This document shows positions 6,749 to 28,589 of a DNA stretch of 64,000 nucleotides, piece after piece. Below the pieces are notes generated by a model. The model was not told the origin of the DNA and did not search any database. It worked only from the letters and a program-made list of their open reading frames with translations. A program made the position numbers and the translations under genes. Every line of letters starts with the position of its first letter. Position 1 is the first letter of the stretch. The stretch comes from Lepidodermella squamata (taxonomy: Eukaryota; Animalia; Gastrotricha): NCBI GenBank assembly GCA_047495785.1, contig JBLDXI010000020.1, positions 62,001-126,000 on the forward strand. Reading direction: 5' to 3'.

Positions 6749-7717
6749 TTAAAAACCGGTCAGCTCGGCGAACGTTCGGTCCAGCTCGGCGCTGATCGTG
6801 CGGTATTTCTCCTTCTCGGCATCAAGCTCGGCTGAATTCGCAAAAAAACAAACATTAAGATTATTTAGATTCAAGTCAAGCCACGAGACAACAAATATGC
6901 TCATGCATTGGCTTTGTTCAGCATCGTCATGCATCCGGGATTTCAGCAAGCTGTTTTTTTTTACAAAAATATGCAATTAATCATGCTCTCTCTTGCATGC
7001 AAAAAAATCATGCTTTAGACTGGGTTGCCGGGTATTAAAAGACTCCAGGTCGCTTTTGGAGATAACGGTGATTTTTATTTACAAGCACGGGATTTCATTC
7101 CAGCAAATACACCCATGTCTCCAACGCTTTTATTTGGTTACACGGTAACACGTTTACACTAGCTTTGACGTTTGACTTGACAGAATCAAGCGTGTTGTGT
7201 ACTCCTCGAGAACATATCGTCCGTCATAGGATGATGATAGAGAAGAAACGCGGGTGATCTGCTGACAGAGGGCTCCACTGCTCAAGAGTAAAAAAATAAG
7301 GATATGCTGATGATACTCGTTTGCTCCAAGCGATTGCAGTTTAAGGAGGCTTCTAGGAGACACATTCACACGCTAAGGCGAATATTGGCAGTCCAGAAAT
7401 CGAATGGGGTTTACAAAGAATTATATGTCAACACAACCGTGGAACAAGTAACAACAATTTGATATCAGTTGGTATCGAACATATAATGTATACAGAACAA
7501 AATGCAGAACAGCACCAGATAAAGTTTTCCTAATTTTCTTGTTGATGTTTACAGCAGCAAAACCTTCTGCTAACGCTAAGGAAAAGACGGACCAGATGGG
7601 GTGGCCGTCGATTCGGGGCTCGGTCAGGAGTGGTTTACATTTGTGCGAGTTCGTTTAGAGATTGGTCAATCTCCTCCCTCAGCTGGCGAACCTCCTCAGT
7701 CTTGGCCAACAGTTCCT
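6749..7717 (-). CDS. TPM: Tropomyosin alternative terminal exons 9: 7717-7635 and 6831-6749 (83 nt coding each)
   Basis: [26 protein letters not shown] and [26 protein letters not shown] (the latter is muscle-type). Confidence 0.92.
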
Positions 7718-10700
7718 CTGTATAAGACAATGAGAAACATCAGTCAAGTGCCGCGCTCTTGGACCAAGCATTATAGCGGTCAGATCGAGGATCATCTGAA
7801 ATTGTTACGGTTTTGCGAAGCTGCGTGAGTTTATGTAAAAAATAGCGTGTGGCAGGATTAATCATCGAAATTTCTAGTCAGTATTAGAATGAAAGTGTTA
7901 AATGTTTCGGCTAACGAGAGGATAAACCGAGTGAGCGAATATGATGAGCGCAGCGGGTAATTTGACCAAAGATGAAACATTTCACATTGTAATCGAGATG
8001 ATAAAAATCGACATGTTGGGTACAAATAGGCGAGGACACGCACACAGGTAATGAAATTCAGCGAACTGCAACCCTTCATCACCGTCAACATACCCTCGGA
8101 CTTGTCAAAGTCGCGTTGAACGCGCTGCCAGGCACGAGTGGCAGCTTCAGCACGAGTTTCAACCTACCCCACCAGAGAGTCGACAAGTTCAAGATAGGAA
8201 TGTACATCACAACGACAACCATCACATTGAGACCCGCTGTCTTATCGAATTCATCTATGGCAGACCCTTCCCTGACCGATTTGGGTAGTACGGGAGAGCA
8301 GTGATTGTTAATGGCGAAGCCAAGAGGCAAGTTGGATCACGTCAAACAGAGACTCGATAGCTACGTATAACAAGAATCGATTGCTAAGAGCGCCACACGA
8401 AGCGAGATTTTGAACAGAGTGGATGGAAAATGAAGAATGGGACCGGATGTCTTCTCAATTCATAAAATTGGGCTTCTTACCCGAGCTTTTATCGAATTCT
8501 TGCTGCAGCTTCTTCCAGCTGCGTTCGGCTGTTTCGGCGCGATGCTCAGCCTTAGCACAGCAGTCAATTACAGATTCATGATTAGGTAACAGGGCCATGG
8601 TGGTAAGGGGTCTCTAACGATACTAGTTTCTTCAACTTGACATATATATGAACAATTATAATTCAGTATTTCTCTTTGGCCTGAAGGATACTCAAGTTAA
8701 TATCTCTTTCCATCAGTTACCGCGTGTACACGTAGTAGTAGTGGTAGTAGTTAGATGGTACCCAGTGCATGATTAGCCGACAAGCAATGCAAAGCCTCTG
8801 TTGTTAATTGCCTTAAGCCTAAAAAATTATTATGTCAAAGCGCAAACCTTCCGTCCGGTCGAGGAGTTTTTGCATGTGTAGTAGTTCACGCTGGGAATGT
8901 TCCGATTTAGCTTCAGCCTTCAGTTTCGAAGCGGGAGGTAGTAGAACAACAGCAAGGCATGTTATTAAGCAGGCAGGGAAGAAAAAACAAACGTTGTCAG
9001 TGGAAATTCAAACGGTTCCGCACACGGACTCAGTCAAATCGGATCAGGAAATCTAGTCCCTAGCTTAATTTCACATTCCTAACACCTCAATTCTAACAAA
9101 CACTCCCGTTTTGACTCCAGTCATTCCGTACTTAATCTGATAGTGGATGACGGCGCAAAAATCGTCAACACTGGTTATCATAATTTATTATGACACTACA
9201 GCATGCTACATGCGCATATCATGCATCAATGGCTAAAATAAGGCAATTTACGCCTACATGCGCATTCCTGGCCGTGCTTATTCATGCGCACTTGAATGCA
9301 TGCCCACTCACCTTCCAATCTATCGACTTCTTTCTGAAGCTTGTTGCAAGTTCGCTCAGCTTCAGCGGCGCGATTTTCGGCCTAATATTACATGATTTCC
9401 CGTAAAATTTAGCACCCACGTAAGACTTTGATAGACTACACGGTATCAACTAGCATAAGTCTATCCCTCTCAGTCGTTTGTCACACCCGCCAATCGTACA
9501 TGATAAGGGAAGTAAAAGTTGACTTACGTCCTTGAGACGAGCAGTGAGGTCGCGGATTTGCTCTTCATACTGATCCTCGCGAGCAGAAGCCTGTGAAATT
9601 AGAATACAGTAGTAAATACGGGGTGAAAATGTGAGATCTTCAAAATGTGTTGAGATGTGTGCTACCAGATCGCATACAACTTTCGATTAAAATCATAAGT
9701 ATTGAAGCATAAAGCATGAAAGCTCTCCATAGTTTCGGTTGCTGGATCTTCTGGGCGCCAGTCGAATATTGAATATTTTTACCTCTTGTTCGTGGAGTTC
9801 CAAAGTCTTCAAGCTGTTGCCGACAACCTTGAGCTCTTCCTCGACTTCATGGAGCTTACTGTACAATATAAAGCGGTTTAGGTCTACGAATTCAGATTCA
9901 TGGGACTGGTGGAGGCATGTGGTCTGGTTTTAGTTTCTGTATCGTGCTTTTGTTAGCAATAGATATGCGGTTAGTTTTCATTGGTCGATGAATCGTCTTC
10001 CAAGCTTTCACGAGCTCTTACCCTATCTGTTTGAATCAAGTTGCAGGTTCGAAATATTCTTACCTTCAACAAATTCGATTCGTATGCTTTCACTCGAGAT
10101 AACGCTGCCCGCATTTCGCCTTCGAGCTCGTGAATTCGGCTATAGCGGCGAGCAGTTAGATGGAAAAGAAAACACAGCAATTTGTTAGTCAATGCAAGCA
10201 ATGTAAAAATGCAATAAAATGCCTCTAGGCATGCCAATCGAAGGTGTTAACAGGGTTTTCAAAGAAGCAGCAGCAACTGCAGCGTTTTTTTTACGTAATT
10301 CTTATATTCGTAGTTTAGCCTGTTGTATGCGATCATCAGAAGGGTTAATGAAACTATGTGCGCGCGTAAAATTAGGAAGCGTCAAGCGACTATTCGATGA
10401 GATCTTAAACAGTTGTACCAACCTCAGCCTCTTTGTTTTCAAGAGTTTTCAAGTTCTGAGTCATGACACGCAGGTCCTCCTCGAGCTGCTTGACCTTGCT
10501 GTTAGCGCGACATGCGAGTAAAAAATAAAATTTAGCAATGTGTCGCAATATCCGTGGGTCAAACACGCGGTTTCAAATATTAATAAGCGAAAACACATCA
10601 AATTGCCTCAATTGGGTAGTTTTGCAGAATTTTCATATCTTCGTATTTTAATCGCTTAGCAACACAGGGGAGAGAAAGCAAATCACCATCATAGAATGAA

Positions 10701-13700
10701 AATGATATTAATCGGGAAAGATATGGGATAAAGGGGTGAATGTCGCCACTTACGTTTCGGCGGCATCAGCGCGCTCTTCGGCGCGAGCCAAATCACCCTC
10801 GCAGACGACTAGACGGCGAGAAAGCTACGCACGCAATGAATTCGCAAATCAATTCAAATTGAGAAATGAGCAGTGGAAATGGAACGCACGATCGTTGCTG
10901 CCGCTTTTACGCAAGTTCGCATTATTTTCGCAAAAATTGATAAAATAAATTATAACAAAAAAACGATAATGAATAACGCTGGGGGCTTATAAATTTAACC
11001 ATGCAAAACACAAAATCATAACTGCATGCTTTGATTTTAAACAATAAACAATAATTGACGATAGGACACAACTAACCGATCCAATTCTCCATTCCTTTCT
11101 TCAGTTCGTTCGAGTTCGCCTTCCAAGACAACAACTTTACGTTGAGCCTATCATCCATGCAGCGTCGTAAAATAAAAACGGGATGTGAGAAAACCTCCAT
11201 GCGAAGTAAAAACAATAAAATATTCGCTTTGTAGCAGCCTAGCAAGCGGTTAGCGCGCCCAATCATCATTCGTCACACCCATCACAGCAACAGACCACAT
11301 ACGACGTGCTCAATGGGACTTGGGTCGAAATGGTGAACTGAAACTTACGCTTCAGCAGCCGCGAGACGGCCCTCCGATCGTTCAAGATCACCCTCGGTAA
11401 CTTGGAGCTTGCGGACAGTCTAACAGCATCGGTAACAGAAAAGTTTAGAAATTTCTCGGAAACTGGGCATGCCACTGCAAATCCACTCGTCGTATGGTTC
11501 AATCGCTCATTTTCGTCATATGACAATTATCAAAAGAAGAGTTCAGAACACGCTGGTATAGTGGTGCTACGGTTTGGTTTAAAGAAATCCAAATCAAGTA
11601 TGACCCTTTTTCGTGCAATATGTCTATCTTTCGATTTCTTTGGGCTAGTCATCACTCATCACAACTCAATCAGAATGTTCAAACATAACAAGCAAGCCCG
11701 TTCCCATGTTAGCGGCGGCAGGACTGAAGTCTGCGTAAAATTTTGTTAAAAAGATGCTGTTTAATATCATGCATTTCATCTACGTGCCACAAGCTGTTGG
11801 TAGTAAAGTCTACATTCCGATCAATCAATAACCCTTCAAGCCTTCGAACCTCGTCGTATTTGCGATCGGCGTCTTCGGCCATGAACTTGGCGGTCTTCAG
11901 CTGTTCCTCAAGCTGATCGATACGTTCATCATCGGCAAGATGACGGCTCTCAAGAACCTTGCGACCACTGTATCGTTCGTAATTCAAATAGAAATTATTT
12001 CAATGATAGATCCACAAGCAATCATCTCATCCAACACACTCATCACATCATCATTAAATTCCGCGCACCTAACGCTTTCACTTATGGGGCCTTCGGAGAC
12101 GCATCGCGAAGCGGCAACGAGACAGCGCGGACCACAGAGACAACAATTATACTTACCTCGTCGTACTTCTTCTCGGCTTCGTTGGCCAGCTTGGTAGCTT
12201 CCTTTACCTGATCTTCCAGGTGGTAGATGCGGTCGTCATCGTTGATACCCTTGGTCTCAAGAACCTTGCGAGCGCTATTTAAACACGTGAATAGTTGAGT
12301 CACGGAAACAAGCGACAAGGTCCCGTCGCAAGCTACAAGTTGCCCATTAGCAAGCCGAATGATAAGCTTTGGCAATATTTAAATAAGCTTAACCTCTTCC
12401 ATCGCTGAGAGTCTATCATCTGATGAGTTTCTCAAAACTTTGAGAGTATCATTCAGTTCCTCAACGCGTTTATCTGACAAATTGAATCGCTGCTCCAACG
12501 CTCGTCGAGCTCTAAATATCACGAAAGGATGAACTAGTGATACCCTTAATAAATCTAGTTATGCCCGACCCAGACGAACTATCAACTAAAGCGAATCCCA
12601 GATGATGCCACTTGAAATACTTTCATTAATACATGCAGTAGTAGACTTGGTACACGCGCGCTATTACCGTTCGCTCTCATCGGCAGATTTCGAGGCTTCC
12701 TCCAACTTGGTCGAGGCCTCGGTGAGACGGCGCTCGGTCTGTTCGAGTTCGTCTTCCAGCAATCGCACGCGACGGTTGAGGGCGGCGACTTCTGACTCGG
12801 CCTGAAAGGAAAATGAAAAAGAACTTGTCACAAAAGTTGGTAATTGATGTCAAAAGCAACACGGGTGGAAATAGCAGGTATATTTATGTATTTTGTCCTC
12901 ATCATTTTTTAGCTCCGATTTATTTCACCTCATCATTGTTAATTGGATAACGGTGAGAAAAGGAACGAAAGCTCGCGCCTCAACCTTCATTAACATAATT
13001 TCTGTTAAGAGCGCCTAATCAGCCTTGTAGCAGGATACAGCATGTACATGACACTTCGCGTTCTTCCCGCAGCAACAAAACAAAATAATAATATGTTGTT
13101 TAGCTGTTCCATAAATGGCCGGTTTGAAAGCACGCAGCTGAGATGCTTTGAGTTTCGTACCTCAAGGCAAACGATATGTTTGCAGCAGGTAATAATATTA
13201 TTAGGATGAAAACTATGAAGTGGATTGGCTACCAGCTGCAGTACCAGCTTGCGTCGCGCTACGGTCCCGCGCGTACATTCATTACGACAAAAAGCACGCG
13301 TCATAGGAATATTTCAAGGCGCACATACATATACATGATATCTATCATATTCTAACAGTGGTCCGGCGCGCGCCAAAATAGTGTCAAAAGGAGATCCCGA
13401 AAGAACGCAGGTAGACAAAAACCAGCGCTGCTTGTCGCTAGCAGAACAATGATGCAGAAGAGCCGGCTAGAAGTTACAGGGGCAGGTAAACGTACAGCTC
13501 CACTGAGATAAAATTGACCGCTACGCCAAACTAGTTTCCAGTAAGGTCTATACAAATACGCCGTTTCTTTCGGCGGTATGACGACCAGTATGTAAGCAGT
13601 CTAGTTTTCTTCGGCAAAAGAGCCGTACGCTTGTCGCATAAAAAAGAGCCAGAGGACCGCAGCTCAAAGAAGAAAGAAATTAGGCTAGCAGCGCGTCAAG

Positions 13701-16650
13701 TGTTTGCTTCGCAGTATTGTGCTAAAAGCTACCGCCTAAGAAAGACATGCCTGCACTGCTAACTCCAGAACAATAATATTATTGTCATGTTACCCCTATT
13801 CAATACGCGCTCACTTTTTGCAAAACATTATACAGCCCGGTGATGCCGATACGCAGAAATGTCGCATGCATTTACCGTTCATACATCGCTCGTTTGCTAA
13901 CATTCAAGTGTGACGCCCGCAGTTTATATATGGAAGCGCGCGCTCGAGCTATTTATCTTAGAATCGCCGTTAGCCGGGTACACCGCTCACAGGTCGTTAT
14001 GCAAAAATAAGCAGTCTCTTGCTCGAAAAGCTGGTGCCGCCCCCTGCAAATGGCTTGCGCTAAGGTATGCAAACAAGGTGCCTAAAAGAATGCTGGGAAA
14101 ACGAATAAAGCAGTATAGAATTTCTTCTTCAAGAATTTGCTGATATTCAGTGCATGAATGTAGAAATGAAGTATGTATTGACAACAGATTCAAGTTAAAT
14201 CGACAACAATTGTGAAAAAAATCGAATGATTGTAAAAGATAAAAATATAGCACCGCATGTTCTGCAATATTAATGGCTTTTCATTAATTTAAAATGGAAG
14301 TTATAAATGTTCCAAGTGGGCGGTGAAATGCGTAATTCGAAAGCTAATTAGTAAAGCATAGAAGGCTCAGAAATAGGGGTTTCACACATTTAGCCAGCAC
14401 ACGGATGTGAACGCTGCAATAAGGGGTAACGCGTATGAACCTTTTCGCGAGTGACGAGTTCAGTCTCAAGCTGAACAGTCTTGGCATCGAGCTCTTCCTT
14501 GACCTTGTCAAGATCATCCTTCATGCCAACCATTTTGTTCTTAAGAACATTAAGAACGCCAGACTGCGAGAACTTTTCACCTTTGCTCATTTTTAATTGG
14601 TTTAACTGAAGGAGAAAATCTAAACTGGCAAAGTCCCACAAACATATCAAACTTGATTCATAGCGGCTGCGTAATAACCCCAATACCAAACAAGAACCGA
14701 CAACGAGGCATATAAAAAAGATGTATACATCACTGAGATATATATGAGATGAAAATAAAAGAAGATCTATCACACCTTTTCACGATTAACGCGCTCTTCT
14801 TCCAGCTGCTGAGACTTGTGCTCCAACTCATCTTTAACTTTATCAAGCTCATCTTTCATGCCCAGCATCTTGTTTTTCAAAACGCCAAGCACTCCAGACT
14901 CAGGTTGTGAAAACTGACCCTTGCTCATTATAAAATTCCTAATACTTGTTTTTGTGGAGGTAAGAAAAAGAGCGAAAGTCAAGTTTAAAATATCAATGTG
15001 ATAACTCAAATCAACTAAGAAGATTCAACAAGGTTCCAAGAAGCCCATACGCACATTCAAAGAAAGCAGATGGCAGGTCAGAATAATGCGACAAGTGTAA
15101 TATGTAAGCTGCTGTCCGACAGTAAAATCTACCAACAGCAACAGCAACAGTAAGCGGTATATGATATACGATGTTAGCCGAAGGAACAATTAGCTGAATA
15201 AGCCATACAAAGTTCAACAACAAATATATATAGCAGTTTTGAGAAAAGAAAGAAGGCATTCTGGAATTAAACTGGGAACAAGTCGTCGGTTTAACAACTG
15301 ATAAACCTTTATATACCATCGCATAATAGCGCAATGTACTAGTCAATTTGCTTATGTCTAATTCTGCAAACATCCCAGGTGAGCTAAAAAGAAAAATACC
15401 GGAGCCGCAGACACTTGATACTAGGGATATTAGCTTTCAAATAAAAATAAAAAACTATTAATTGCGTTTCACTAATAAAATTTGAAACTGATAAAATTAT
15501 AAATAATATACTTATTTTCAAACGCATAGTTTTGTCGCATGCGAAACTTTTTCTGACAACGATCCAAGGCTTGCCCAAGGTGTTCGCGAGCACCACCGTT
15601 TAATGTCTCATTTCCTTTGTCTTGACATGCACCGCGATATTTGCATATATTTTCAGAGTATTCAGATTGTCAAGTCTCAGCGCTCTGCGCCTGCTAGACG
15701 CTAGATATCATTCAAACGGCCCCAAAATCGTCACGAATTCATGAAGCCTTTCCAGAGACGCAAACATTAAATGTGCTAAGACGAGGCAAAATGTTGGAGA
15801 ATTGGATATTGAGTTGCCATAGATGAAAAAGAATTTTATCATTTGAAATTTGAGACTGGAGAGGCTGATGTCGAGGTCGACGGCAGAAGACTAATGCGCA
15901 TGAAACTCAAGCAAACGTCTTCGCACTTCCACACTGATTCTCTAGAGTTTCTATGCAGTCATAGGCGCACAAGATCGTCAGATCATTTCAATCAGGTTAA
16001 AATTATTAAGTCTTATCACTAGCAAATCTTTTGCAAACTATTAACCCCTGCTGCCCGATGCTCTTTTGGCTGTCACTGCGAGACGCATAAGGTTGATCCT
16101 GGGTAAAATTGATTTAATAGCTTAACTAATTTGAATGGAAGCATTCTGAACTCAAGCGGAACGCAAGCTGTCATCTAATAAATTTGTTAATGATAAGAGG
16201 TGAATTACAAGCCTATGACACTTTCCTACAACTTATTCGTACACCGTGAAATAAATCGTGCTTTCGAAGTTCGAAAGCTGGGACCATAGTGTAATTTCAA
16301 GAGAACTTCTTCGAGTTGCTTACCTGTTGAAGCTTTTTGTCTGATTCTTCGAGCTTGGTGTTTGAATCCTCGAGCTTGGTTGCAGTTTGATCGAGTTCGT
16401 TTTCGAGTTGGGTGATTTTGCGCTGCAAGTTGGTGATTTCTTCGTCTTGCTATAAAAAGTGCTCCTTTAATTGTATCAGATTTCCAAAATGATAATCCTG
16501 TCATACCTTGTTGACCTTCTCCTCGCACTCTTTGAGTTTTACCTCCACCTGCTCAGCGCGATCCATCGCAGTCTCCTTCTCGCTTTTCATGGCCTGCATC
16601 TTTTTCTTGATGGCATCCATAGTGTTGCTGGCTCCTCCGGTATCACCCAT
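6749..16650 (-). CDS. TPM: Tropomyosin gene with extensive alternative exons
   Basis: Canonical [12 protein letters not shown] start (ATG 16620; in-frame upstream ATG 16650). Exons have canonical tropomyosin sizes (126/134/118/71/76/63/70/83 nt) and GT-AG ends. C-terminus ...[12 protein letters not shown]. Confidence 0.97.
6902..7013 (-). promoter_or_regulatory. Cluster of five (U)GCAUG motifs upstream of the muscle-type terminal exon
   Basis: Plus-strand CATGC at 6902, 6928, 6982, 6996, 7009; three are full UGCAUG. Confidence 0.6.
8481..9381 (-). CDS. TPM: Tropomyosin exon 8 triplet: 9381-9312, 8917-8848, 8550-8481 (70 nt each)
   Basis: [23 protein letters not shown] / [23 protein letters not shown] / [23 protein letters not shown]. 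Confidence 0.9.
9202..9303 (-). promoter_or_regulatory. Cluster of six (U)GCAUG Rbfox-type motifs just downstream of tropomyosin exon 8a
   Basis: Plus-strand CATGC at 9202, 9209, 9220, 9257, 9283, 9299. Confidence 0.7.
9528..9590 (-). CDS. TPM: Tropomyosin exon 7 (single copy found, 63 nt)
   Basis: [21 protein letters not shown]. Confidence 0.93.
9783..10498 (-). CDS. TPM: Tropomyosin exon 6 triplet: 10498-10423, 10139-10064, 9858-9783 (76 nt each)
   Basis: [25 protein letters not shown] / [25 protein letters not shown] / [25 protein letters not shown]. Confidence 0.92.
10754..11419 (-). CDS. TPM: Tropomyosin exon 5 triplet: 11419-11349, 11147-11077, 10824-10754 (71 nt each)
   Basis: [23 protein letters not shown] / [23 protein letters not shown] / [23 protein letters not shown]. 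Confidence 0.92.
11850..12511 (-). CDS. TPM: Tropomyosin exon 4 triplet: 12511-12394, 12274-12157, 11967-11850 (118 nt each)
   Basis: [39 protein letters not shown] / [39 protein letters not shown] / [39 protein letters not shown]; all flanked by AG..GT. Confidence 0.92.
12668..12801 (-). CDS. TPM: Tropomyosin exon 3 (single copy, 134 nt)
   Basis: [45 protein letters not shown]. Confidence 0.95.
13109..13118. promoter_or_regulatory. CArG box (SRF site) in a tropomyosin intron
   Basis: CCATAAATGG matches CC(A/T)6GG, with a CAGCTG E-box ~20 nt away; a single short motif. Confidence 0.3.
14441..14590 (-). CDS. TPM: Tropomyosin alternative first exon 1b, copy 2
   Basis: [50 protein letters not shown]|gt; paralogous to copy 1. 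Confidence 0.9.
14776..14928 (-). CDS. TPM: Tropomyosin alternative first exon 1b, copy 1 (short isoform)
   Basis: [51 protein letters not shown]|gt; phase 0 into exon 3. Confidence 0.9.
16324..16650 (-). CDS. TPM: Tropomyosin exons 1a (16650/16620-16507) and 2 (16449-16324), long-isoform N-terminus
   Basis: [48 protein letters not shown] | [42 protein letters not shown]; 57-nt intron. Confidence 0.95.
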
Positions 16651-19241
16651 GGTTGATTTTGGATTCTACTTAAAGCGACTAAAAATACATCAGAAGATTG
16701 AAAAACGAATAGCAAAATGTTTGTTCCACTGGATTTGTATGAGCATTGTCTCCGCGGTAATCAGTTTCAAAACATAAGAATGGCTGCACATTGCATTTCG
16801 CGAAAATCAGAACATTTTGCGAGGTGACGATACATATAGGCGCACGTTGCTTGGGAAAAGCGATTAACACAATAATGTTAAGAAGCAAATAAGTGAAACT
16901 GTAAGTTGAACTATTTTTAATATAATGAAACATTAGGTATTGATTTCGGGCCGCGCAGTTATTGTGGACATGAAAGGCAACAAGTTATATCTGCTCCGAC
17001 AAGAATGAGCGGGTACCTTTCTATCTTTCCAGATAAAACGTACATACCGATGGTTGAAGGCTTGCAGCCTGCTATAGCGGAATTATTACAGTTCCATAAA
17101 TAAAACTACCATGGCATCGTTGGTAGGTATAATATAAATAACATCAGCCGAGTGCTGACTGCTAGCTGTTGCTCATGTTATTTCTTCTGCTGCTGGTATT
17201 CGTTAAATATCGAACAGGCCAAAAATGAGCGATCGCAGAATCCACAGATACACTCGCGGAACGACTTCGTTGTATATACAGGCGAATATAATGGGCGCGC
17301 ATCTCATAAGCGTACGCGTAATCGCAGGTTTTGATCGCGAAAGCGCTTTTCGCCTCCGAGTCAGATCGGCGATCTATTTCTCTTTCGCTTGTTTACCTCA
17401 ATGCGCCATAGCGCCGTGTTACGTAGATTCAGCTCCAATCTCTCCCAGCAGCCAACCTCACTGGTAATAACAAGGCAGCTGCTGAAAAAGGAGGCATCAA
17501 ACCTGCGCCCGGCGTGCAAAACATTTACTCCTTCCGCGCAGCGTGAACTCATGCATTTTATAACGCTCAGCGCATCGGTACAGCAGGCCACATTGATGGC
17601 GATTCGCATGCCGTCCGCTCGTCTTCGGCGGGCGGCGTTGCCATATCAGTAGTGATTAATCGGCATCGCCGTAAATCTCGAGCTATATCCATAGGGATGA
17701 GCAAGGTAAATCGGAGAGCGTGTCTTCCAGATTATTCAAGACCATGCGCCGCGATAATAAATAAGGCCTCGCGATCATACGCTTCTTGCGAGGTACTGCC
17801 TAGTTCGAAACATATTATTACATTACCGCAATTAAAGTAAGGAAGCTGCATTTCGGACTATCTCTATAAACACACGTGCATGCCTTTCGCCGGCCCCAGG
17901 ATAGGAAGATATAAAGTTAGTGTCATCTCCGATAGCACCGAGTATTGATTCTCATGAGCTCTTGCACAGCGTTGCTTTGCTGCCCAAATTGCTGGTAAAC
18001 GTGTCTGGTAGAACGTGCGCCCATTGCAATATCTACGCTATCACTGCGAATTGCCCGCTGCATATGCGGCTTCTCATTTATAGGCGCTGCAGCAACGGTT
18101 CCGCGGAACACGCAGCGGCGTGTTTTGCTCTACCAGTTAATTTAGCGGCCGCTCGAATAATACGATCGTGTACCCGAAGCTGTATTATTGCGATCGCGCC
18201 GAATCAGAGGTGTGTAACTTTAGCTCCGAAGGCGAATCGCCCGCGCTTCGGCGCATGCTGCTTATTGGGCGCATTGATGAGCAACGCACTTCGGCGCAAA
18301 ATAACATGTTGGCTGCTGTTGTATTTTCGAACCTAAATCGGCAGCACCTCGCCCGCCACTGTCAATAATACGAAGCCACATCGAAAAGAACCCGAGTTTT
18401 TCTCTGTAGCTGCATTAGCCGACGGCCGCTCGTAAAGAACAACGCAGGAGTATTTGTTGTTAGCCGTAACTCGGCATATGTATCAAAGAACTTCCGAGTC
18501 CGAAACGATAGTCAGGGGTAATCTCGACCTCGATCTCCGCATCAGATTAGCCCAGAAAAAAGCCAAAGCTACTTAACGTTTAATGAGAAAAACTACTTTC
18601 AAAAGCTCAGGTGCGATGATAACATTGGAAGTCTGCTGCGAAGAAACCCGGAATGATGACTTTGAAAACGAGAAAATTGTGGCACGTCGATGGCGTGGCC
18701 TTGCATCTAAAAATTCGGGTTATCCATTACAGGTGCAACAGCGTAGGTAGGTTTTCAGAAAGTCACAAACCAACGCAAAATATTCCGCTTTTTGACCACG
18801 TTGGAGTCAAGAGGCGACAGCACAATCACACTCGCATATAATTTGCGGCAAAAAACGCATTTGCATTAGTCAATTTTATTATGTAACAATTTTTACAATG
18901 TATTAATGCTGCTATATAAAACAACGCTCGTGCTGAGAGACCAGTGCGCTGACATTCCAGTGAACAATTTGATAACAAAAATGACTCGAGTATCGGCGGC
19001 TGAAAAAATGCGCTGCCGTAAAAATATTGTTGATCACCACAACCAAGTTACATTTATTGTGTTCTCTTGCTCGCTAACCGACAAAAAGTGATATAATAAA
19101 TAGGAACAGAACCGGTGAAAAATAAGTCGCCACATTTCACACAATTATTTAACATTATAGCTTTCCAGCACCAGTCATCAAGCACAAAAATAAAATGGAT
19201 TCAAGTAAAAAATAAATGCACCTATGGGCGGGCATTACGAC

Positions 19242-20546
19242 TTAGACACTCAATGCGTTCGAATTCCTCAGCTTTGCCAAAGCGTGGTTCGAAACGTGTG
19301 ACTTTGACTTGCGGCCGACGACTTTGAGCGCTCCTCCGAACAACGCGTCCATGAATTCATGACAATTTATTGTTACTGAAAAAAAGAAACCGCACATTTG
19401 AAGTGGTCTAATGGCAAAAACCGCATTACTACCTGGAGAAATATCTGTTAGACTATTGAAAGCTAGAACAGCGGAACTGGCGTCTTTGGCAGTGAGAATT
19501 CTATTCCGCTGCAGATGTATTAAATTTAGGGCGGCCCCGAACAGCACTTTCGGCCCGTCGAAAAGCAAGCAGTCCCAGATGCGAAGAGTGGTTTCACTCG
19601 GAAGGCAGTTAGCGAAGGCAGTTACCATCCACCTTGAGGCAACTGCACCAAGTGGCAATGCGTGCCGTCTCAAACAGATGGCGAGTTGCTGATCTCGTTC
19701 TTCCACAAGTGACCCAAGCACTGCGAGGTCAGACAACAAACCAGCCATTTTCGGTGAAAAGTAATCGCGTAAAATATTTCGTGTAAAAATAACTAGCAGG
19801 AAGAACACATCCTCCTCAAAGCTGGTATCCTAAATCAACAGGTGATAAATTTAAACTTCTCTATATGCAATTGGTAATAATTACTATGGACAGTTGATCA
19901 ATCTTTGACCTCGATACGAGAGGATTTTCACGGAGGAATTTGGCCCGAGAAAACGTCACCAGCAGCATTCCAGTGATGAGATTCATGCCTTGACAATACC
20001 CTATGTCTTCCATGTAGCGTGCTGAAGCAAATAGTATCCTGCGCAGCGAATCGAACCCTGTTCGCTGAAAGAACTCATTATCGGGATAAGTTCTGGCTAG
20101 ATCGCAAGAAATTTGATGCTCCTAAAATAAAACGTTAGCTATGTACAATTAAGGCCAGCCTTCAAGATACCGTGGCTTGAGGAAGCGGCGCTGCGTCTTC
20201 GGCAATCAAACGTTCGTACAGACCGGGATTCTCCATCTTCAACTTGGCTGCTCCAGAGACCGCCATCCATATTTCAGGACGCCGATTTTGAGGCACGCCT
20301 AGTGACATAAACTGTGGCAATAGAGGGCAACAAGGAAAAAATATTCATGCGAATACCTTTTTGAATGAAACGCTGCAAAACTCGAGATCGTTCAATGGTA
20401 AGAACTGGAGTGAATAGCGAGCTAGGAAACCTGTCCCATCTTACCGCTCGCCTCTTCAAAATCGCATCGTAATTTTCATGCCACGTTGAATACATATCTG
20501 CGAAGTTTCCAGAGATCGGAAATCCATAATCGTCAAATAGAGACAT
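19242..20546 (-). CDS. GRTP1: TBC-domain Rab-GAP, GRTP1/TBC1D6-like (multi-exon)
   Basis: N-terminus DDYGFP...LKRRAVRW...RFIQKG|VPQNRRPEIWMAVSGA; catalytic fingers ISCDLART and YCQGMN; TLRIWDCLLFDGPKVLF. Confidence 0.88.
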
Positions 20547-23500
20547 TAAAAATAAATAAGCCTATCAAATCAATTGAGAAATCTATTTCGAAGCAAAATA
20601 ATAATCAGATGTTGGGGAATTCGCTTTCCTTAAAAATACGCTCTTAAACTAGCTCTTAACTCTGTCATAGGTCATAGCTGTTCACATAAGATTAGTGCTC
20701 AACTGTTTGCATCAATAAATTGTGGAAAATAAGTGCGGTTGGCTATACAACTGTCAGGAAATAGCGGCTCTCGCTTATATTCATGTATATCTCGCTACTA
20801 CTGAGTTTTCTCATCAAATTTAGGCGCACAGAACGGCAAGCAACTGACAAATCAATAATATAGCCGCTACGAAAAGAGAATGAAACCCCAGAATACAAAC
20901 ACAGCGCGTAACACAGCCGAAATGGAGAGAAATAGTAATATTTTCCATGACAGCATTCGGCATTGTCAGCTGTATAAACAGGAGGCATCCTCAGGGAAAT
21001 TAGTGTTATCACTACTCCGTCCCCCGTCTACATTTCATCATGCAATACGACTGAAAACAAAATATAAACGACTATTTAAATGGCGCATATATAGGGAGCA
21101 TCGGGCGAAGTTGTTTAAAGGTTAAAAAATAATATGTAGCAAGTAATTGCTATACAATTTGGTTACGACCCAAATTCAATAGCCTAAGAACTATCAGAAG
21201 TTTTTCAACATTGGTTAGGTCTAGTGCAGTAAATTGTTCTCAAAGCATTATTTGAATAGGGTGGGAGCGAACAAATGTTCCCTATCGAATATCGAATGAT
21301 TGACATTTCAGATGCTTCCGTGTGAAACTGATGATACATAAGACCTGCAGTGTATATTTTTCGAAGAGCTTGCTTGAAGTTTCCACGGTTCATTTTCAGA
21401 AGTTGTTAAAAACAATCAGCATCAAAGATTGCATTGATTGATACAGGATATGTGTCAAAGAAGTGGAATAGAATTGTACAGATTGGAAAAAGACTACAAA
21501 AACATCATGCCGTGGGAATTTAAAATAATCTTTATTCTTTACTGTGCTATCATGACAGATGACATTACCAATATCGTTACGCGCTTAAACGACGTGCGCA
21601 ATGCAGCAGGGACAAAAAACTGTTCTCATTTGTTGTTCCCGAAAAACCTAAATTCAATCGGTGGATAAATTGATAATTCTAGTTTTGATACGCTACCAAT
21701 AAAAGTAACTATATTCATGCTACCAAAATAAAAATTAGAGTTTTAGCTATTTGCTGAGTTGTCCGATTTTCGGAAGAGCAAAAATTGAATATGGGCCCCT
21801 TCTGGCGCTACATGTAGTATAAGTAATATTCCTTTACCTTTAACCTAAGCCTTAGACTAGACGGCGCGCAGTGGTCGGCGAGCTCAGCTCCTTCTGTATG
21901 CCACCGAATATAGCGGTGAGAAATCCATGTGACATGGGAGTACATGTGAGAAAATGGACCTCGCGAAAATATTATTCGCGACATTTTTTGCATCGCGAAG
22001 ATATTGGAATCGCGAAAATTTTACACAAGCCAACACTTCTTCACTGGGCAAATCATCAAGTTCCTCAGAAGACGGATGATGTAGAGCAACCGTCGCAAAT
22101 TACCATGGCATCTTTCTTGTTTTACCAACACCTCGGCGAAAAGTACGAGGAATGCGGCTATGAAGCCAGGTTTTGATTTTCGAAAGATCACTTTTGTTCG
22201 TCGCGAAAATTTCGCTCGCCGCTCTTTTAGGCCTTCACGAAAATTTCACGTATACAGTATAACGCGACCGTGATCAAATACTTGGAGATTAGTGTTCATG
22301 AAGTGGCTGCTGAATTCTGAATGAAGACCCTGAATTCTACATTTCGGTACTCGTGTACAATTTGAAGTGCAGTCAGTGATCATTAAGTCATCCAAGTATC
22401 ACACTTCGAGGAAGCTTCATTTCTCATTGCTGAATCTAATCCACCCCTTTCCTTACGCCTTAAGCCAGACCTGAACCTAACCAAAGCTATCCATTAATAG
22501 ATCCATCGCAGATGTGTGACATTGCCGATGTCAAGAAATGCATGATCGAAGAAAATGTGAAAGCATTTCTTTCGTGAGGACACGGCAGCCGGTGGTTACC
22601 AACGAAACTGGAAAGCTGGAGTAGGAACTAGACAGCAAAAACTCGCACCGCACCGTCTCAATCGCAGCAGCAGAGTGTAAAATCAAAAGTACCATTTTCA
22701 AGGCGATTGCTTCTAGACACGTGATTACATCTCGACACAACAATTGAAAAAACTCGTGAAAAAAATTGAAAATTTCGGCCGCCTAAATTAAAAAATAAAA
22801 ATAAATAAATTTTAAGCTTTTTTCAAATTTTTTTTTTTAATTCTATAATTTTTCATTCCTCAAAACTCCGACCTCGATTATTGCGTGAAGATTCGATTGT
22901 TGATGGTTTGTCTGTCAGTTGCTACCATTCTGCGGGGTTTTGCATGAGTTTCGCAAGTTTTCAGAGTTGAGAGAACCTAGTGATTAGTCATGTAGCAACT
23001 AAATTTTTACGAAATATCTCTTTATTTTTCCTAAACAATTGGTAAAATCAGATAGCTGAGATCATAAGCTAGCTGATAGTATACTTTTCATCGTAATATC
23101 TCATACTAAGGTCCCGCTTCTGGCTGCTGGATTCTACAACGGCTGTTAATATTTAACCCATCTGAATTTAATAACTTGATTGAAGCCGTTGATAACTTCA
23201 TTTGAGAAAATGCAAAACTAATTTGACATGCCCGCAAAAATGGTCTCGAAAACCCCAGAAAATCGGTGGCGAGAATTTAAAGATATCAATATTTAAAAGT
23301 AAATATTGTTGGAATTATGCCAGTGGCAAACAGAGCCAATAGCCAGTGGTTTTTATTGCCAAGGTTTATAATTTTACTTATACTTATTACTTTTGATAGC
23401 TAGGAACATGTTCGCAGTAGAAATTGTGTCGGAAAAGGATCAATGTTACAAACATCTCCAAATCTAAACTGAATTAAAAAATGTTCTTATTTGACAATGT

Positions 23501-23903
23501 GAACTCTTTGGAAATAATAACATCTCCTATGGTAATTCTCACTAACCTATACACCTTAATGATAAATTACAAAGGTACGCTTTTAAGCCGCATTCGTCGC
23601 GAATATGATCCATGTCCCAAAAATTGTGATTTTGTTGTCAAATGTTTTCCAGGAAACTATTGATGCATGGATGCATGTCAGCTAGTTTTCCAAACTAAAA
23701 GTGCAAAAGATGAGTTAAACTTGGAACGATGCTTGACTTAGAAAGAACCCCTGGAAAGATGGAAAGAAGAAAGCTAGTTGGGTCATTCTTTGCCAAAAAT
23801 TGCATTCAGTAGTTTAGGGGACTATACGACAGCCACAACAGAAAGAACGGAATGAGCGGAAAGAAGAAATAATTGTTATTCATTGTTTTTCATTGTATAG
23901 ATC

Positions 23904-26900
23904 ATGCCGATTAAAGTATTTATGGTAATACCAGATGATTCCGTACGAGGAGTCTTACAAGAGCGATGGAAACAAGCAGAAGAATCACTAACACAGGCTG
24001 GCGAAGGTTTCTCAATTGTCCGTATCTCCTGCGTTGATGTTTTGAAACTGGGCAAAACCACTTCATACTCTCATGAACACATTTTTGTTCTCTCACAATT
24101 TGAGGGTAGAGCATTTGATCACCTCGTTTCACTCGGTTGCAGAGTCTACGGGGCTCCTTGCGTTCTCCAATGTCTCGATAAACGTCGGTCGCTACCTAGG
24201 AGAACGCCAATTTATGCGCTCATTCTACCCGAGATTGTAGTTTGCTGTTCGGGTCTCGAGAGAGACTTGCGCGATCGCATTTTCAAATACGTTCATTGGC
24301 TTGGCGGTGATCACAAATTGGATCTAACTGCCGATGTTACTCATCTAATTACGAATAAGGTTGGCAGTGCCAAATATTCAGCCTTCATACGGTTGAACAA
24401 ACCAATAGTGTCGTCTGTTTGGATCGAAGAATTATGGCATTTATCAGAATCTCAGTACCCTATTCCGGAAGCTACGATTCAGAAAACGATATCCAATGCT
24501 GCTTTGCCGGCTTTCGCGGGACTTGTTGTATGCTCATCTGGATTTCGCGACGAGGAGAGGAAGTTTTTCAAAATGAGCGTCGAGAAGCACGGCGGAGTAT
24601 TTAGTGGCCAACTGAGGCAAAACGAATGTACTCATTTGATTGTTCGAGAGCTATTTGGTGACAAATACGACGCTGCTTGTCAATGGGGAAACATTAAAAT
24701 TGTCGCACCTGCTTGGCTATTTGATTCAGTGCATGCCGGTTGTTGTCTGCCCGAGGAAAATTATGTTTATTATGGCCCACGAAATGCAAAGCCTGGAGAA
24801 GTTGCCGCCACTCAAGCAGCTGAAATTCTCGAAACAACGAAAGCTAATGGCGAATTTAAGGAAATGCAATCGAGAGCAGTAGTTACCTCATTCATGAATA
24901 ACTGCTCTATTTACATACACAACTTGCCATCTCCGTTGTCTGAAGAGCTTAGAAAAATGATCATATCTGCTGGGGGAATGTGCGTTGCCGAGCCTCTTGA
25001 CATGGTTACCCACGTTGTTGCTACAGAACATGACATGAATGAAGCTTATGCAATAGTTAGCAATCATTGCTCGTTGGCTCACGTTGTCACTGCTGACTGG
25101 GTTCGATTTTCTTATGCTGCCCAGAAGATCGTAGCCGAGGCAAATTTCGAGCCAACAGTGAAAAAATCGGCATTGAACGCTACGTTTGATGATGAAAAGA
25201 CCAACTGCACAATAGTTTTGGCAGAAAACACTTTCCATTTAAATGAAGAAAAAGCTACTGAACCAGTTGTGAAATCCGCAGCTGACGTGAAATCGCTCGA
25301 TCCTCGAAAAATAGGTTTAGATGGCTTCAAAGTCAAGAGCGAGCGTAACTCCGAAGTGTTCAATATCTTGAAGAGAATTGACTGTGAACTGATTCACGTG
25401 GCACCCACCACCCCTTCGAGTGCTATCGATCTGATGATCGTGCCTTTCGGCCAGGCTCCGTCGCCGTCAGCTGAGCGTTTGATCCAAAGTGGCGTCCCGG
25501 CAGTAAATACATTGTTTCTCGAGGTGCTCAAAATGGGTCTCGATCGATACGCAAAAATGCATAAGCACAATTCTTCTAGCCAGCCAATTCGAAAATTGAT
25601 TCCTGATTTGGATGAACAGCTCGGAAATCCTTTCGTGAAAATTCTGAATCCGGTAGTTGCGTGCTTGGAAAGCTGTTGCATTACTTTGACTGGATTTGAT
25701 CAACCCGATCGTACTTTCCTAGTTCGATTGGTCATCGCGCTCGGGGCAGCTCATCAAGAACTGTTCGCCAGGTCAGCAACAAGTGCCAATTCAATGCAGC
25801 TACAGCGATCAACTCATTTGATCGGCGCGAAGGCTAGTGGTGAAAAATATGAAAAGGCCAGACAATGGCAAGTTCCCGTTTTGCAATCAGCGTGGTTATT
25901 GGAGTGCTGGAAAACGGGAAAACGTGCCAACGAGGTCGAATATCTGCTGCAGCCTGCATTAAACACGACCTTGAACGAAACAAAATTCACTGCTGATAGA
26001 TCTGTTCTCAATGCTACCAAGGTCATGGAAAACGAAAGCAATTTATCGAGAACTAATCCTCTCGGTTCGCCTCCCTTTGTTTCAGCGCCGAAAACCCCCA
26101 TTACACCAGGAGCGGAGGAGAAATCTTCAATAAGCCGTCGGTTAGATGCAATCTTGGCGGCTTCTAAATCTGGCGATGGAAGTGCAATAGCTAGCAGAAT
26201 TCGACAGAATTGTCGCCCTTCTCCAGTAAAAACACCAAAAACTCCGTCCCTGCATCACGAACATGCGAATTTTGTAGCGCCGAGTAGACCTCTGGTCAAC
26301 TACGGCGTGGAAGCGTCACAATCTCTGCAGGTTATGTGGGGTGAAGACGGAGCATCGAGCAAATTTTCCATCGGCTACGAGCGTATAGACGAAGAGCCGT
26401 CATCTGGACCAGTGCGGCTCAAAAGTTTAACTTTGGTTGAAGATGCTATGTCGAGTCCGAATACCAGCTTGGTAAACAATTGTGACACCTCAGGCCATCC
26501 GAAATGTAGCCCATTGTTGAATTCTAATGGAAACAGCAACAGCGAACCAATGCCAATAAGGGCACCCGATGCTGTTGTGGTGCGCAGCGCAACCTCATTT
26601 CCTATTGATCGGAGACATTGTGCCAATAATGCAAATTTGGAGGCCAGCATGACTGGAAATTCGCGTTCACCGCCTGTTTTCCAGTTCACGGGATTGACTC
26701 CGTCAGAGCGAGACGACGCTGCTGCTTTGTTCGAGCGGCTTGGTGCTAAAGTTGTCGCCACGCAAATAACGTCAATGACAGAAGGCCACATGGCGACCAG
26801 TCTAACCGACTCGCCTATAGAGGCATCGTGTACTCATCTGATTGTTGCCGAGCCGAGTAGAACGCAAAAGTTTCTCTCGGGAATAGCAAGTGGAAAGTGG

Positions 26901-28329: not shown

Positions 28330-28589
28330 CTGACTGCTCAATTTTTGTTTCAAATCACATTCTTGCATTTGTTTTACGATGATATTTGAAAAAGTTTTTC
28401 ATTGATGATCTGACGTAATGCTTTGTTGCCTCCAGTCTTTTTTTTTTACGATAAAGCAGTATCTATAAAAATGATGCAATTCTTCAATAGTTATTATTTA
28501 TGATTTCGTTTTTTTAATTTAGAGTGATATTAATTTTTAAAACATAGCTATAGCTGAGATGCGAATCAAATAATCGAGATTTGAAGAAG

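What the first reader, a model, noticed from the sequence alone, without database searches (positions are those of the whole stretch)
6749..16650. Tropomyosin gene with four triplicated mutually exclusive exon arrays
Seen: exons 4 (3x118 nt), 5 (3x71), 6 (3x76) and 8 (3x70) are each present in three intact copies of identical length and phase. There are also 3 alternative starts and 2 terminal exons, so 3x3x3x3x3x2 = 486 theoretical isoforms. None of these lengths is a multiple of 3, so double inclusion shifts the frame, which fits mutual exclusivity. Duplicated exons are known in animal tropomyosins, but consecutive triplication of most internal exons is extreme and invisible to the ORF track.
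Basis: partly seen in the sequence, partly recalled or inferred. Interest (0 to 1): 0.75.

Follow-up and report, generated by a model that had tools for sequence, protein, structure and literature searches.

The report
Single tropomyosin gene, many alternative exons
This small animal's only tropomyosin gene holds three or four interchangeable copies of four internal exons, all kept intact in a related species; this is a large example of a known design, plus a conserved RNA pairing that probably helps pick one exon 6 copy.

Summary
A minus-strand tropomyosin gene (6749-16650) has the ancestral exon lengths 126/134/118/71/76/63/70. Exons 4, 5 and 6 are each present in three tandem copies. There are three start exons and two terminal exons.

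It is the only tropomyosin locus in the 121-Mb assembly, which is probably the gastrotrich Lepidodermella squamata.

A related species found in a metagenome (L016) has the same layout except that it lacks copy 8b. Synonymous sites between the two are saturated, and dN/dS is 0-0.15 for most copies (4a 0.43, 8c 0.31), so these are working exons. A spliced ORF from a third relative joins exon 7, an 8x-type exon and exon 9b.

Including two copies, or none, from an array always produces an early stop.

The only long intron blocks conserved between the two species are the two arms of a 12-13 bp duplex that loops out exons 6b and 6c.

Paired copies of these same exons occur in flatworm and insect genes, four other spiralian-like genomes have triple exon 4 arrays, and C. 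elegans lev-11 has three triple arrays. This is therefore a large new member of a known kind. The 486 (really 648) isoforms are theoretical only; no RNA from this species was reachable.

The parts
16507..16650 (-). Exon 1a. Start of the long form; the first ATG is at 16650 and a second in-frame ATG, at the usual tropomyosin N-terminus, is at 16620.
   Evidence: PF00261 positions 1-37. 87.5% identical in the relative L016, including the 10-codon extension. The intron to exon 2 is 57 nt.
16324..16449 (-). Exon 2, 126 nt, single copy.
   Evidence: Ortholog in L016 has dN/dS 0.12.
14776..14928 (-). Exon 1b1. Alternative start of a short form; it has its own ATG and splices to exon 3.
   Evidence: 73% identical in L016. 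It resembles the N-termini of short-form flatworm tropomyosins.
14441..14590 (-). Exon 1b2. Second short-form start, a paralog of 1b1.
   Evidence: 74% identical in L016.
12668..12801 (-). Exon 3, 134 nt, constitutive.
   Evidence: PF00261 E = 9.5e-10. 93% aa identity to L016, dN/dS 0.06.
12394..12511 (-). Exon 4a, 118 nt; the most divergent copy.
   Evidence: In-register score is beyond all null windows. Heptad core is kept. A positional ortholog is intact in L016, but with only 28% aa identity and dN/dS 0.43. It groups with copy 1 of L012-L015.
12157..12274 (-). Exon 4b, 118 nt.
   Evidence: PF00261 E = 3e-9. 79% aa identity to L016, dN/dS 0.15.
11850..11967 (-). Exon 4c, 118 nt; the canonical, muscle-like copy.
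   Evidence: PF00261 E = 1.3e-11. 100% aa and 88% nt identity to L016. 79% identical to the Paragonimus copy.
11349..11419 (-). Exon 5a, 71 nt; canonical copy.
   Evidence: 100% aa and 83% nt identity to L016.
11077..11147 (-). Exon 5b, 71 nt.
   Evidence: dN/dS 0.05 against L016.
10754..10824 (-). Exon 5c, 71 nt.
   Evidence: dN/dS 0.02 against L016.
10423..10498 (-). Exon 6a, 76 nt.
   Evidence: 76% aa identity to L016; dS is saturated.
10321..10333 (-). Box A. Intronic element 89 nt after the exon 6a donor, complementary to box B.
   Evidence: One arm of the perfect 13-nt inverted repeat I11. Conserved exactly in L016, where the rest of the intron does not align. The 12-nt core is found nowhere else in the window or in L016.
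10064..10139 (-). Exon 6b, 76 nt; a divergent copy.
   Evidence: No Pfam hit. All seven heptad core positions are hydrophobic. 92% aa against 76% nt identity to L016.
9783..9858 (-). Exon 6c, 76 nt; canonical copy.
   Evidence: 100% aa and 89% nt identity to L016.
9666..9680 (-). Box B. Intronic element 75 nt before exon 7, complementary to box A.
   Evidence: A 15-nt block identical in L016. The duplex with box A is about -22 kcal/mol here and -20 to -23 in L016. Pairing loops out exons 6b and 6c.
9528..9590 (-). Exon 7, 63 nt, constitutive.
   Evidence: 100% aa identity to L016.
9312..9381 (-). Exon 8a, 70 nt; canonical copy.
   Evidence: PF00261 E = 6.6e-4. dN/dS 0.07. 78% identical to the Echinococcus copy.
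8848..8917 (-).
   Evidence: Ortholog in L016 has 78% aa and 68% nt identity. An 8x-type exon is spliced between exon 7 and exon 9b in P0264: 15 of 23 residues match 8x, against 6-9 of 23 for the other copies.
8481..8550 (-). Exon 8b, 70 nt; closest to 8a at the DNA level (66% nt).
   Evidence: PF00261 E = 0.016. Intact splice sites. No ortholog in L016, so cross-species support is missing for this one copy.
8094..8163 (-). Exon 8c, 70 nt.
   Evidence: 52% aa identity to 8b. Ortholog in L016 has 83% aa identity and dN/dS 0.31.
7635..7717 (-). Terminal exon 9a: 27 codons plus the stop.
   Evidence: 88% aa identity to L016; dS is saturated. Its similarity to 9b is no better than generic coiled-coil similarity.
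6749..6831 (-). Terminal exon 9b; canonical muscle-type C-terminus.
   Evidence: PF00261 positions 217-240. 100% aa identity to L016 and to P0264.

Best explanation
This is the only tropomyosin gene of the genome, and it carries its isoform family inside itself as 'internal paralogs'.

Layout. Three alternative 5' ends (1a+2, 1b1, 1b2) feed constitutive exon 3. Then come three arrays of three copies (exons 4, 5, 6), constitutive exon 7, an array of four copies (exon 8), and two alternative terminal exons.

Why one copy per array. Each mRNA must carry exactly one copy from each array, because 118, 71, 76 and 70 are not multiples of three. Two copies, or none, shift the frame into stop codons, and such mRNAs would be removed by nonsense-mediated decay (the decay itself is inferred).

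Age and constraint. The copies are old: synonymous sites between them are saturated. Almost all are held by purifying selection.

Canonical isoform. Copies 4c, 5a, 6c, 8a and 9b are identical or nearly so in a related species and are the most similar to other animals' muscle tropomyosin. The set 1a-2-3-4c-5a-6c-7-8a-9b is therefore inferred to be the muscle isoform. The other copies are inferred to serve short-form or cytoskeletal isoforms, used in a few fixed sets tied to the choice of start, as in other tropomyosin genes.

Exon 6 choice. A conserved 12-13 bp pairing joins box A (after 6a) to box B (before exon 7). It brings the 6a donor close to the exon 7 acceptor and encloses 6b and 6c in a loop. 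Pairing would therefore select 6a, and without pairing the exon nearest to exon 7, 6c, would be used. This is the downstream-docking-site logic known from insect genes.

Shown here: the gene anatomy, the conservation, the frame consequences, and the conservation of both duplex arms. Inferred: actual exon usage in this species, coupling between arrays, decay of mis-spliced RNA, and the effect of the duplex on splicing.
For: - Anatomy. Pfam matches are collinear.
- Single locus in the 121-Mb assembly.
- No further copies of exons 2, 3 or 7.
- Stops in every shifted frame, within the same or the next exon.
- Between copies, codon positions 1 and 2 are generally more alike than position 3 (clearest for arrays 4 and 5; 8x-8c the exception), and dS is saturated.
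- The related species L016/L017 has the same exon order, lengths and splice sites for all exons except 8b. With dS about 1 or saturated, dN/dS is 0-0.15 for 2, 3, 4b, 4c, 5a-c, 6c, 7, 8a and 9b. dN is low, with dS saturated, for 6a, 6b, 8x and 9a.
- P0264 is a continuous ORF joining exon 7, an 8x-type exon and exon 9b.
- Boxes A and B are the only non-low-complexity exact intron blocks of 12 nt or more shared between the short orthologous introns from exon 3 onward (those flanking the arrays). They are mutually complementary, and their core occurs nowhere else in the sequence held.
- The downstream docking model is described in PMC4691838.
- Promoter-coupled exon choice in tropomyosin is summarised in PMC3342872.
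- lev-11 yields seven known isoforms despite more than 100 possible combinations (PMC10512467).
Against: - No RNA or protein from this species could be reached, so no splice junction here has been seen.
- 4a is barely conserved in sequence (28% aa identity, dN/dS 0.43), and 8b has no ortholog in L016.
- Boxes A and B are identical in the two species, so there is no compensatory change to prove that pairing, rather than two separate protein-binding sites, is what is conserved.
- Only one selector was found for box B; the 6b-6c intron has none.
- Arrays 4, 5 and 8 show no conserved pairing.
- P0264 was seen only as a predicted protein. Its contig could not be fetched, so a processed retrocopy is not excluded.
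Confidence: 0.75

Rival explanations
1. One or more copies, most likely 4a or 8b, are decaying pseudo-exons that are never spliced into productive mRNA. The working arrays would then be smaller than they look.
For: 4a, 6b and 8x have no Pfam hit and no convincing PDB match of their own. 4a shares only 28% aa identity with its positional ortholog, with dN/dS 0.43. 8b is absent from L016. A possible decayed partial copy lies at 8303-8234, which shows that copies can die here.
Against: Against L016, 6b has 92% aa but 76% nt identity, and 8x has 78% aa but 68% nt identity. An 8x-type exon is spliced in P0264. 4a keeps its length, frame, both splice sites and heptad core in both species, and it groups with an intact copy in four other genomes. 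8b has canonical splice sites, a Pfam match and six of seven hydrophobic core positions.
Confidence: 0.15
2. The arrays are chosen independently of one another, so the gene really makes hundreds of isoforms, giving Dscam-like combinatorial diversity.
For: Nothing in the DNA forbids any combination: every copy in an array has the same length and phase.
Against: In the tropomyosin genes that have been studied, exon choices are tied to the promoter and few isoforms exist. lev-11 has seven known isoforms out of more than 100 combinations (PMC10512467), and promoter-linked assignment is summarised in PMC3342872. The copies here fall into a strongly conserved canonical set and faster-evolving sets, which fits a few fixed partnerships.
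Confidence: 0.08
3. The repeated exons are an assembly artefact or a very recent tandem duplication with no functional meaning.
For: None found. Tandem repeats are a known source of assembly error in general.
Against: The copies share only 20-57% aa identity and their synonymous sites are saturated. The same architecture appears in two independent metagenome assemblies of a related species.
Confidence: 0.01

Closest known systems
Caenorhabditis elegans lev-11 (its single tropomyosin gene)
   Same: It is one gene for the whole family. It has two promoters for long and short forms and several arrays of mutually exclusive exons, three of them triple (5a-c, 7a-c, 9a-c; also 4a/b). A divergent third copy, 7c, went unrecognised for years (PMC5921574, PMC10512467).
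   Different: The nematode exon structure differs. Here the ancestral exon lengths are kept. The arrays sit at exons 4, 5, 6 and 8 with 3, 3, 3 and 4 copies, and there are three starts rather than two. Usage here has not been observed.
'Internal paralogy' of tropomyosin genes: mutually exclusive, tandemly duplicated exon sets (Irimia et al. 2010, Mol Biol Evol; known to me from its citations in PMC3342872 and PMC9741552 and from memory of the abstract)
   Same: Recurrent tandem duplication of tropomyosin exons, mutually exclusive use, and assignment of copies to the long or the short form.
   Different: The paper itself could not be read here, so I cannot say whether arrays of three or four copies in spiralians were already drawn in it. 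No gastrotrich genome was available in 2010.
Flatworm tropomyosin genes (Echinococcus granulosus L007, Paragonimus westermani L008)
   Same: They have the same exon lengths and tandem copies of the same exons (4, 5, 6, 8). The polarity is also the same: the canonical copy is last in array 4, first in 5, last in 6 and first in 8.
   Different: Each array has two copies, not three or four. As recalled from the literature (not tested here), flatworms have more than one tropomyosin gene.
Downstream docking-site and selector RNA pairing in insect mutually exclusive exon clusters (Dscam1 exons 4 and 9, 14-3-3 xi, srp; PMC4691838)
   Same: A conserved intronic element just upstream of the next constitutive exon pairs with an element downstream of a distal variant exon. 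This loops out the variants in between and brings the chosen donor close to the acceptor.
   Different: Only one selector was found, so this looks like a two-state switch (6a against 6b/6c), not a competition among many selectors. The animal is a non-arthropod, and nothing has been tested experimentally.
Vertebrate TPM1-4
   Same: The internal exon lengths are identical (126/134/118/71/76/63/70), and there are alternative 1a/1b starts, mutually exclusive internal exons and alternative exon 9s.
   Different: Vertebrates spread the family over four genes. Their internal arrays are pairs (2a/2b, 6a/6b). Exons 4, 5 and 8 are single.

Membership tests
Tropomyosin (Pfam PF00261) | Matches to the family profile that run collinearly along the exon order. 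| tested here: met
   Exon by exon the profile positions run 1-37, 40-77, 39-82, 85-122, 123-145, 147-171, 172-192, 193-215 and 217-240. Exons 3 and 4c alone pass the curated cut-off.
Tropomyosin (Pfam PF00261) | An unbroken heptad coiled coil without proline. | tested here: met
   The a/d core positions are in register in all 13 variable copies. Hydrophobic occupancy ranges from 4 of 7 to 7 of 7 (7-8 of 11 in exon 4). None has a proline.
Tropomyosin (Pfam PF00261) | The ancestral bilaterian exon structure. | tested here: met
   The lengths 126/134/118/71/76/63/70 and the phases are the same as in the flatworm and insect loci fetched here.
Mutually exclusive tandemly duplicated exon sets | Tandem homologous exons of equal length and phase, each with its own splice sites. 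| tested here: met
Mutually exclusive tandemly duplicated exon sets | Inclusion of two copies, or of none, destroys the reading frame. | tested here: met
   No length is a multiple of three, and stops appear in the shifted frames of the same or the next exon.
Mutually exclusive tandemly duplicated exon sets | Every copy is maintained by selection. | tested here: met
   12 of the 13 array copies have intact orthologs in L016, with dN/dS below 1 and mostly at or below 0.15. 8b has no ortholog, and constraint on 4a is weak.
Mutually exclusive tandemly duplicated exon sets | Exactly one copy per array in mature mRNA. | not testable with these tools
   No RNA from this species was reachable. The only RNA-level hint is P0264 from a relative, which has a single 8x-type exon between exon 7 and exon 9b.
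Docking-site / selector RNA structures | Complementary intronic elements placed so as to loop out alternative exons. | tested here: met
   Boxes A and B form 13 perfect base pairs 641 nt apart, enclosing 6b and 6c.
Docking-site / selector RNA structures | Both arms are conserved while the surrounding intron is not. | tested here: met
   Exact blocks of 13 and 15 nt are shared with L016, and no other significant block exists in these two introns. Only one relative was available.
Docking-site / selector RNA structures | Several selectors compete for one docking site. | tested here: not met
   Only the 6a-6b intron pairs with box B beyond shuffles; the 5c-6a and 6b-6c introns do not, in either species. 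Single-sequence tests of eight cluster and orientation models were all within the shuffle range.
Docking-site / selector RNA structures | Compensatory base changes, or a mutational effect on splicing. | not testable with these tools
   The core of both arms is identical in the two species. No experiment was possible.

The most novel reading that the evidence does not exclude
Each array is chosen independently, perhaps stochastically, so that one cytoskeletal gene yields hundreds of tropomyosin isoforms (up to 648). That would be Dscam-like diversity applied to actin filaments, with RNA pairings such as box A/box B acting as part of the selection machinery.
Probability: 0.07. Interest if true: 0.8.

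Novelty: new member of a known kind. Interest (0 to 1): 0.42.

Why it matters
Tropomyosin is the textbook case of isoform diversity built by duplicating either exons or whole genes. Here an animal with a single tropomyosin gene has taken the exon route further than any case I could document: four arrays of three or four copies, three starts and two ends. It is a clean natural test of the 'internal versus external paralogy' idea. It is also a compact 10-kb model in which one long-read cDNA experiment would show how several arrays are coordinated.

The conserved box A/box B pairing is a concrete, mutable candidate for RNA-structure control of exon choice outside arthropods and vertebrates.

In practice, public gene models of relatives (for example the 371-aa Echinococcus and 387-aa Hymenolepis proteins) string such copies together. 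Automated annotation of this gene will probably be wrong unless the arrays are recognised.

Tried and rejected
All later scripts used coordinates only.
- Pfam searches of the divergent copies 4a, 6b, 8x, 8c and 9a gave no usable hit, nor did PDB searches of 4a, 6b and 8x.
- Single-sequence tests for docking-selector pairing, eight models against shuffles, showed nothing beyond chance. Folding whole introns against each other was uninformative. The box A/box B pair only became convincing once the relative was available.
- The 18-nt complement between exon 5a and the 4a-4b intron (I5) is not conserved in L016 and was dropped.
- The per-exon tree resolves little (39 columns). Similarity to the flatworm copies could not establish orthology of the divergent copies.
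- MAFFT stacked the exon rows on top of one another (A1, A2). Those alignments were not used as queries.
For the same reason no full-length isoform of this species could be sought, because the word search only sees proteins near the query's length.
- Look-ups for P0035 and P0023 found no contig.
- Extending L014 downstream failed, because the only suitable called ORF reads through stops.
- The exon 3 word search found no close relative. The exon 4c search did.
- Irimia 2010 is not held in the paper library.


Full report
**What is there**

The minus strand between 16650 and 6749 carries a tropomyosin gene. I scanned for frames of the ancestral exon lengths that are open in the right phase and flanked by AG and GT. 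This recovers:
- exon 2 (126 nt), exon 3 (134 nt) and exon 7 (63 nt), one copy each;
- three copies each of exon 4 (118 nt), exon 5 (71 nt) and exon 6 (76 nt);
- four copies of exon 8 (70 nt).

Three start exons and two terminal exons complete the gene. Pfam PF00261 matches run collinearly from profile position 1 to 240 along the exon order. The one error is exon 8: a fourth copy, which I call 8x (8917-8848), lies between 8a and 8b and fills what would otherwise be an 831-nt gap in a regularly spaced array. No extra copies of exons 2, 3 or 7 exist anywhere on that strand of the window.

**Is it more than chance?**

Splice dinucleotides, length and an open frame alone are weak evidence. The strand holds 39-62 such frames per length class, so 0.2-0.7 would fall inside each array by chance. 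Three further lines settle the question.

- In-register, ungapped similarity to the sister copies exceeds every one of 20,000-37,000 open windows elsewhere in the window, or for 6b ties the single best. Except for 9a, it also clearly exceeds the similarity to any other stretch of the same coiled coil.
- All 13 array copies keep hydrophobic residues at the heptad a/d positions in the same register, and none has a proline.
- The architecture is conserved in another species (see 'A related species' below).

**Age of the copies**

The copies share 20-57% amino-acid identity. Third codon positions are near random, while first and second positions are generally clearly more alike. The duplications are therefore old, and the copies have evolved as protein-coding sequence ever since.

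**Gene copy number and organism**

A profile search and two exon searches of the whole 121-Mb assembly find tropomyosin only at this locus. Earlier notes of this scan name the genome as a gastrotrich, probably Lepidodermella squamata. I could check this only indirectly. The published assembly is 122 Mbp in 157 contigs with 43% GC (PMC11660948). This assembly is 121.2 Mb in 151 contigs, and the window is about 43% GC. That paper mentions neither tropomyosin nor alternative splicing. The closest full-length proteins among cluster representatives come from flatworms, which fits the usual placement of gastrotrichs beside them. No part of the window looks human.

**A related species**

A word search with the open frame around exon 4c found a 93-residue ORF whose exon part is identical to ours but whose intron-derived flanks differ. 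Its contigs are L016 (a 32.7-kb metagenome scaffold) and L017. They carry the same gene with the same order, lengths, phases and splice sites:
- 1a, including the N-terminal extension;
- 2, 1b1, 1b2 and 3;
- 4a, 4b, 4c; 5a, 5b, 5c; 6a, 6b, 6c; and 7;
- 8a, 8x and 8c;
- 9a and 9b.

Only 8b is missing. Synonymous divergence is about 1 or saturated.
- dN/dS is 0-0.01 for 4c, 5a, 6c, 7 and 9b.
- It is 0.02-0.15 for 2, 3, 4b, 5b, 5c and 8a.
- dN is 0.08-0.21, with dS saturated, for 6a, 6b, 8x and 9a.
- It is 0.31 for 8c and 0.43 for 4a.

So almost every copy is a working coding exon. The two with the weakest support are 4a, which evolves fast but stays intact, and 8b, which has no ortholog. At the DNA level 8b is closest to 8a (66% nt, dS about 1.3), so it may have arisen near the split of the two species or been lost in the relative.

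**RNA-level hint**

A search with the frame around exon 9b returned one protein, P0264 (74 residues, JGI contig of 1,057 nt). It reads straight through three segments:
- an exon 7 segment (18 of 21 residues identical to ours);
- an exon 8 segment that matches 8x (15 of 23 residues here and 16 of 23 in L016, against 6-9 of 23 for 8a, 8b and 8c);
- exon 9b (26 of 26).

These three exons are separated by introns in both genomes. The sequence therefore most likely comes from spliced RNA of a third relative, and it shows a single 8x-type exon in use. I could not fetch the contig because the look-ups were exhausted, so a processed retrocopy is not excluded.

**How exclusivity is enforced**

None of the array lengths is a multiple of three. 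I read each exon in the phase it would have after a second copy, or after skipping the array. Stop codons appear in that exon or in the next one in every case. Such mRNAs would be targets of nonsense-mediated decay; the decay itself is inferred, not shown.

Other known mechanisms are not indicated:
- All introns are GT-AG of the major type.
- The introns between copies are 119-394 nt, in a gene whose shortest intron is 57 nt, so steric blocking is unlikely.

**RNA pairing in the exon 6 array**

- Single-sequence tests against shuffles showed nothing.
- The repeat finder listed a perfect 13-nt inverted repeat between the 6a-6b intron and the 6c-7 intron, which on its own is about what chance allows.
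- I then compared orthologous introns with L016. Among the short introns from exon 3 onward, these two arms are the only non-low-complexity exact blocks of 12 nt or more that the two species share. They are 13 and 15 nt long, in introns that otherwise do not align.
- The 12-nt core occurs only at these two sites in the 64-kb window and in the 20-kb L016.
- The predicted duplex is about -22 kcal/mol here and -20 to -23 in the relative.

Box A lies 89 nt after the 6a donor and box B 75 nt before exon 7. Pairing encloses 6b and 6c in a loop of 641 nt (793 nt in the relative).

This is the geometry of the downstream docking-site model of insect clusters, in which pairing brings the chosen donor close to the acceptor, suppresses the in-loop exons, and leaves the proximal exon as the default (PMC4691838). 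Here that predicts 6a when the boxes pair and 6c, the canonical copy, when they do not.

There are limits to this reading. The arms are identical in the two species, so there is no covariation. No second selector exists for 6b. No comparable pair was found for arrays 4, 5 or 8. A second candidate, between exon 5a and the 4a-4b intron, is not conserved.

**Comparison with what is known**

- Tandem duplication of tropomyosin exons, with mutually exclusive use tied to long-form and short-form promoters, is a published and recurrent theme (Irimia 2010, as cited in PMC3342872 and PMC9741552; the paper itself is not held).
- The Echinococcus and Paragonimus genes fetched here have the same exon lengths and two copies each of exons 4, 5, 6 and 8. 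The canonical copy sits in the same position as here: last in array 4, first in 5, last in 6, first in 8.
- Three insect-type loci have pairs of exons 4, 5 and 7.
- Four further genomes from ENA assemblies (L012-L015, unidentified, with mollusc- or annelid-like sequence) have three copies of exon 4 in the same order, two copies of exon 5, and, in the two loci whose flanks reach that far (L012, L015), two copies of exon 3. In a weakly resolved tree, our 4a groups with their first copy.
- C. elegans lev-11 is a single gene with 4a/b, 5a-c, 7a-c and 9a-c, and has seven known isoforms (PMC5921574, PMC10512467).

Against this background the present gene is the largest case I could document: 3, 3, 3 and 4 copies, three starts and two ends in the only tropomyosin gene. 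It differs in degree, not in kind. The figure of 486 (correctly 648) isoforms is an upper bound that known tropomyosin genes come nowhere near.

All searches were done exon by exon, by reference. Full-length isoforms of this species could therefore not be sought, and no structure was predicted.

**Verdict**

This is a real, well-conserved and well-explained feature of moderate interest. Its main value is as a compact model for coordinated mutually exclusive splicing. The conserved box A/box B pairing is the most testable new element.

Noticed in passing
window 16621-16650 (-); L016 5911-5940: Ten in-frame codons with their own ATG precede the usual tropomyosin N-terminus. They are conserved in the related species apart from a one-codon in-frame indel. 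A similar extension is present in a Tara Oceans metatranscriptome protein (P0035). An N-terminal extension would affect the head-to-tail overlap of tropomyosin.
   Followed up: partly
window 8234-8303 (-): This is a possible decayed partial fifth copy of exon 8, lying between 8b and 8c. Its last 20 nt and GT donor resemble the end of 8b, but it has no AG acceptor and its first half encodes prolines. The similarity is near chance level.
   Followed up: partly
window 16651-16710, 14929-14988, 14591-14650 (-): Each of the three start codons is preceded, 10-31 nt upstream, by a pyrimidine-rich tract and an AG. This fits addition of a spliced leader, which earlier notes report for this genome, or upstream 5'UTR exons. 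The alternative starts may therefore be chosen by acceptor rather than by promoter.
   Followed up: no
window 14591-14605 (-): The 15 nt between the AG upstream of exon 1b2 and its ATG are open and in frame with the end of 1b1 (153 nt). Splicing 1b1 to 1b2 would therefore give an in-frame tandem N-terminus. Nothing shows that this happens.
   Followed up: no
L012 2919-3221; L015 567-870: In these unidentified spiralian-like genomes, exon 3 is present in two copies only about 35 nt apart. That gap is too short to be an intron, so the pair would be mutually exclusive for steric reasons.
   Followed up: no
window 7501-7526 (-): A 26-nt block lies 108 nt after the exon 9a stop codon and is 81% conserved in L016. 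It may be a 3'UTR or 3'-end processing element of the 9a isoforms.
   Followed up: no
P0112, P0023, P0143, P0120 (public flatworm proteins): These deposited gene models of 319-387 residues string both copies of alternative tropomyosin exons together. They are annotation errors caused by unrecognised mutually exclusive exons.
   Followed up: partly
window 30001-32000: GC content rises to 0.54 here, against about 0.43 elsewhere in the window. I did not examine this region.
   Followed up: no
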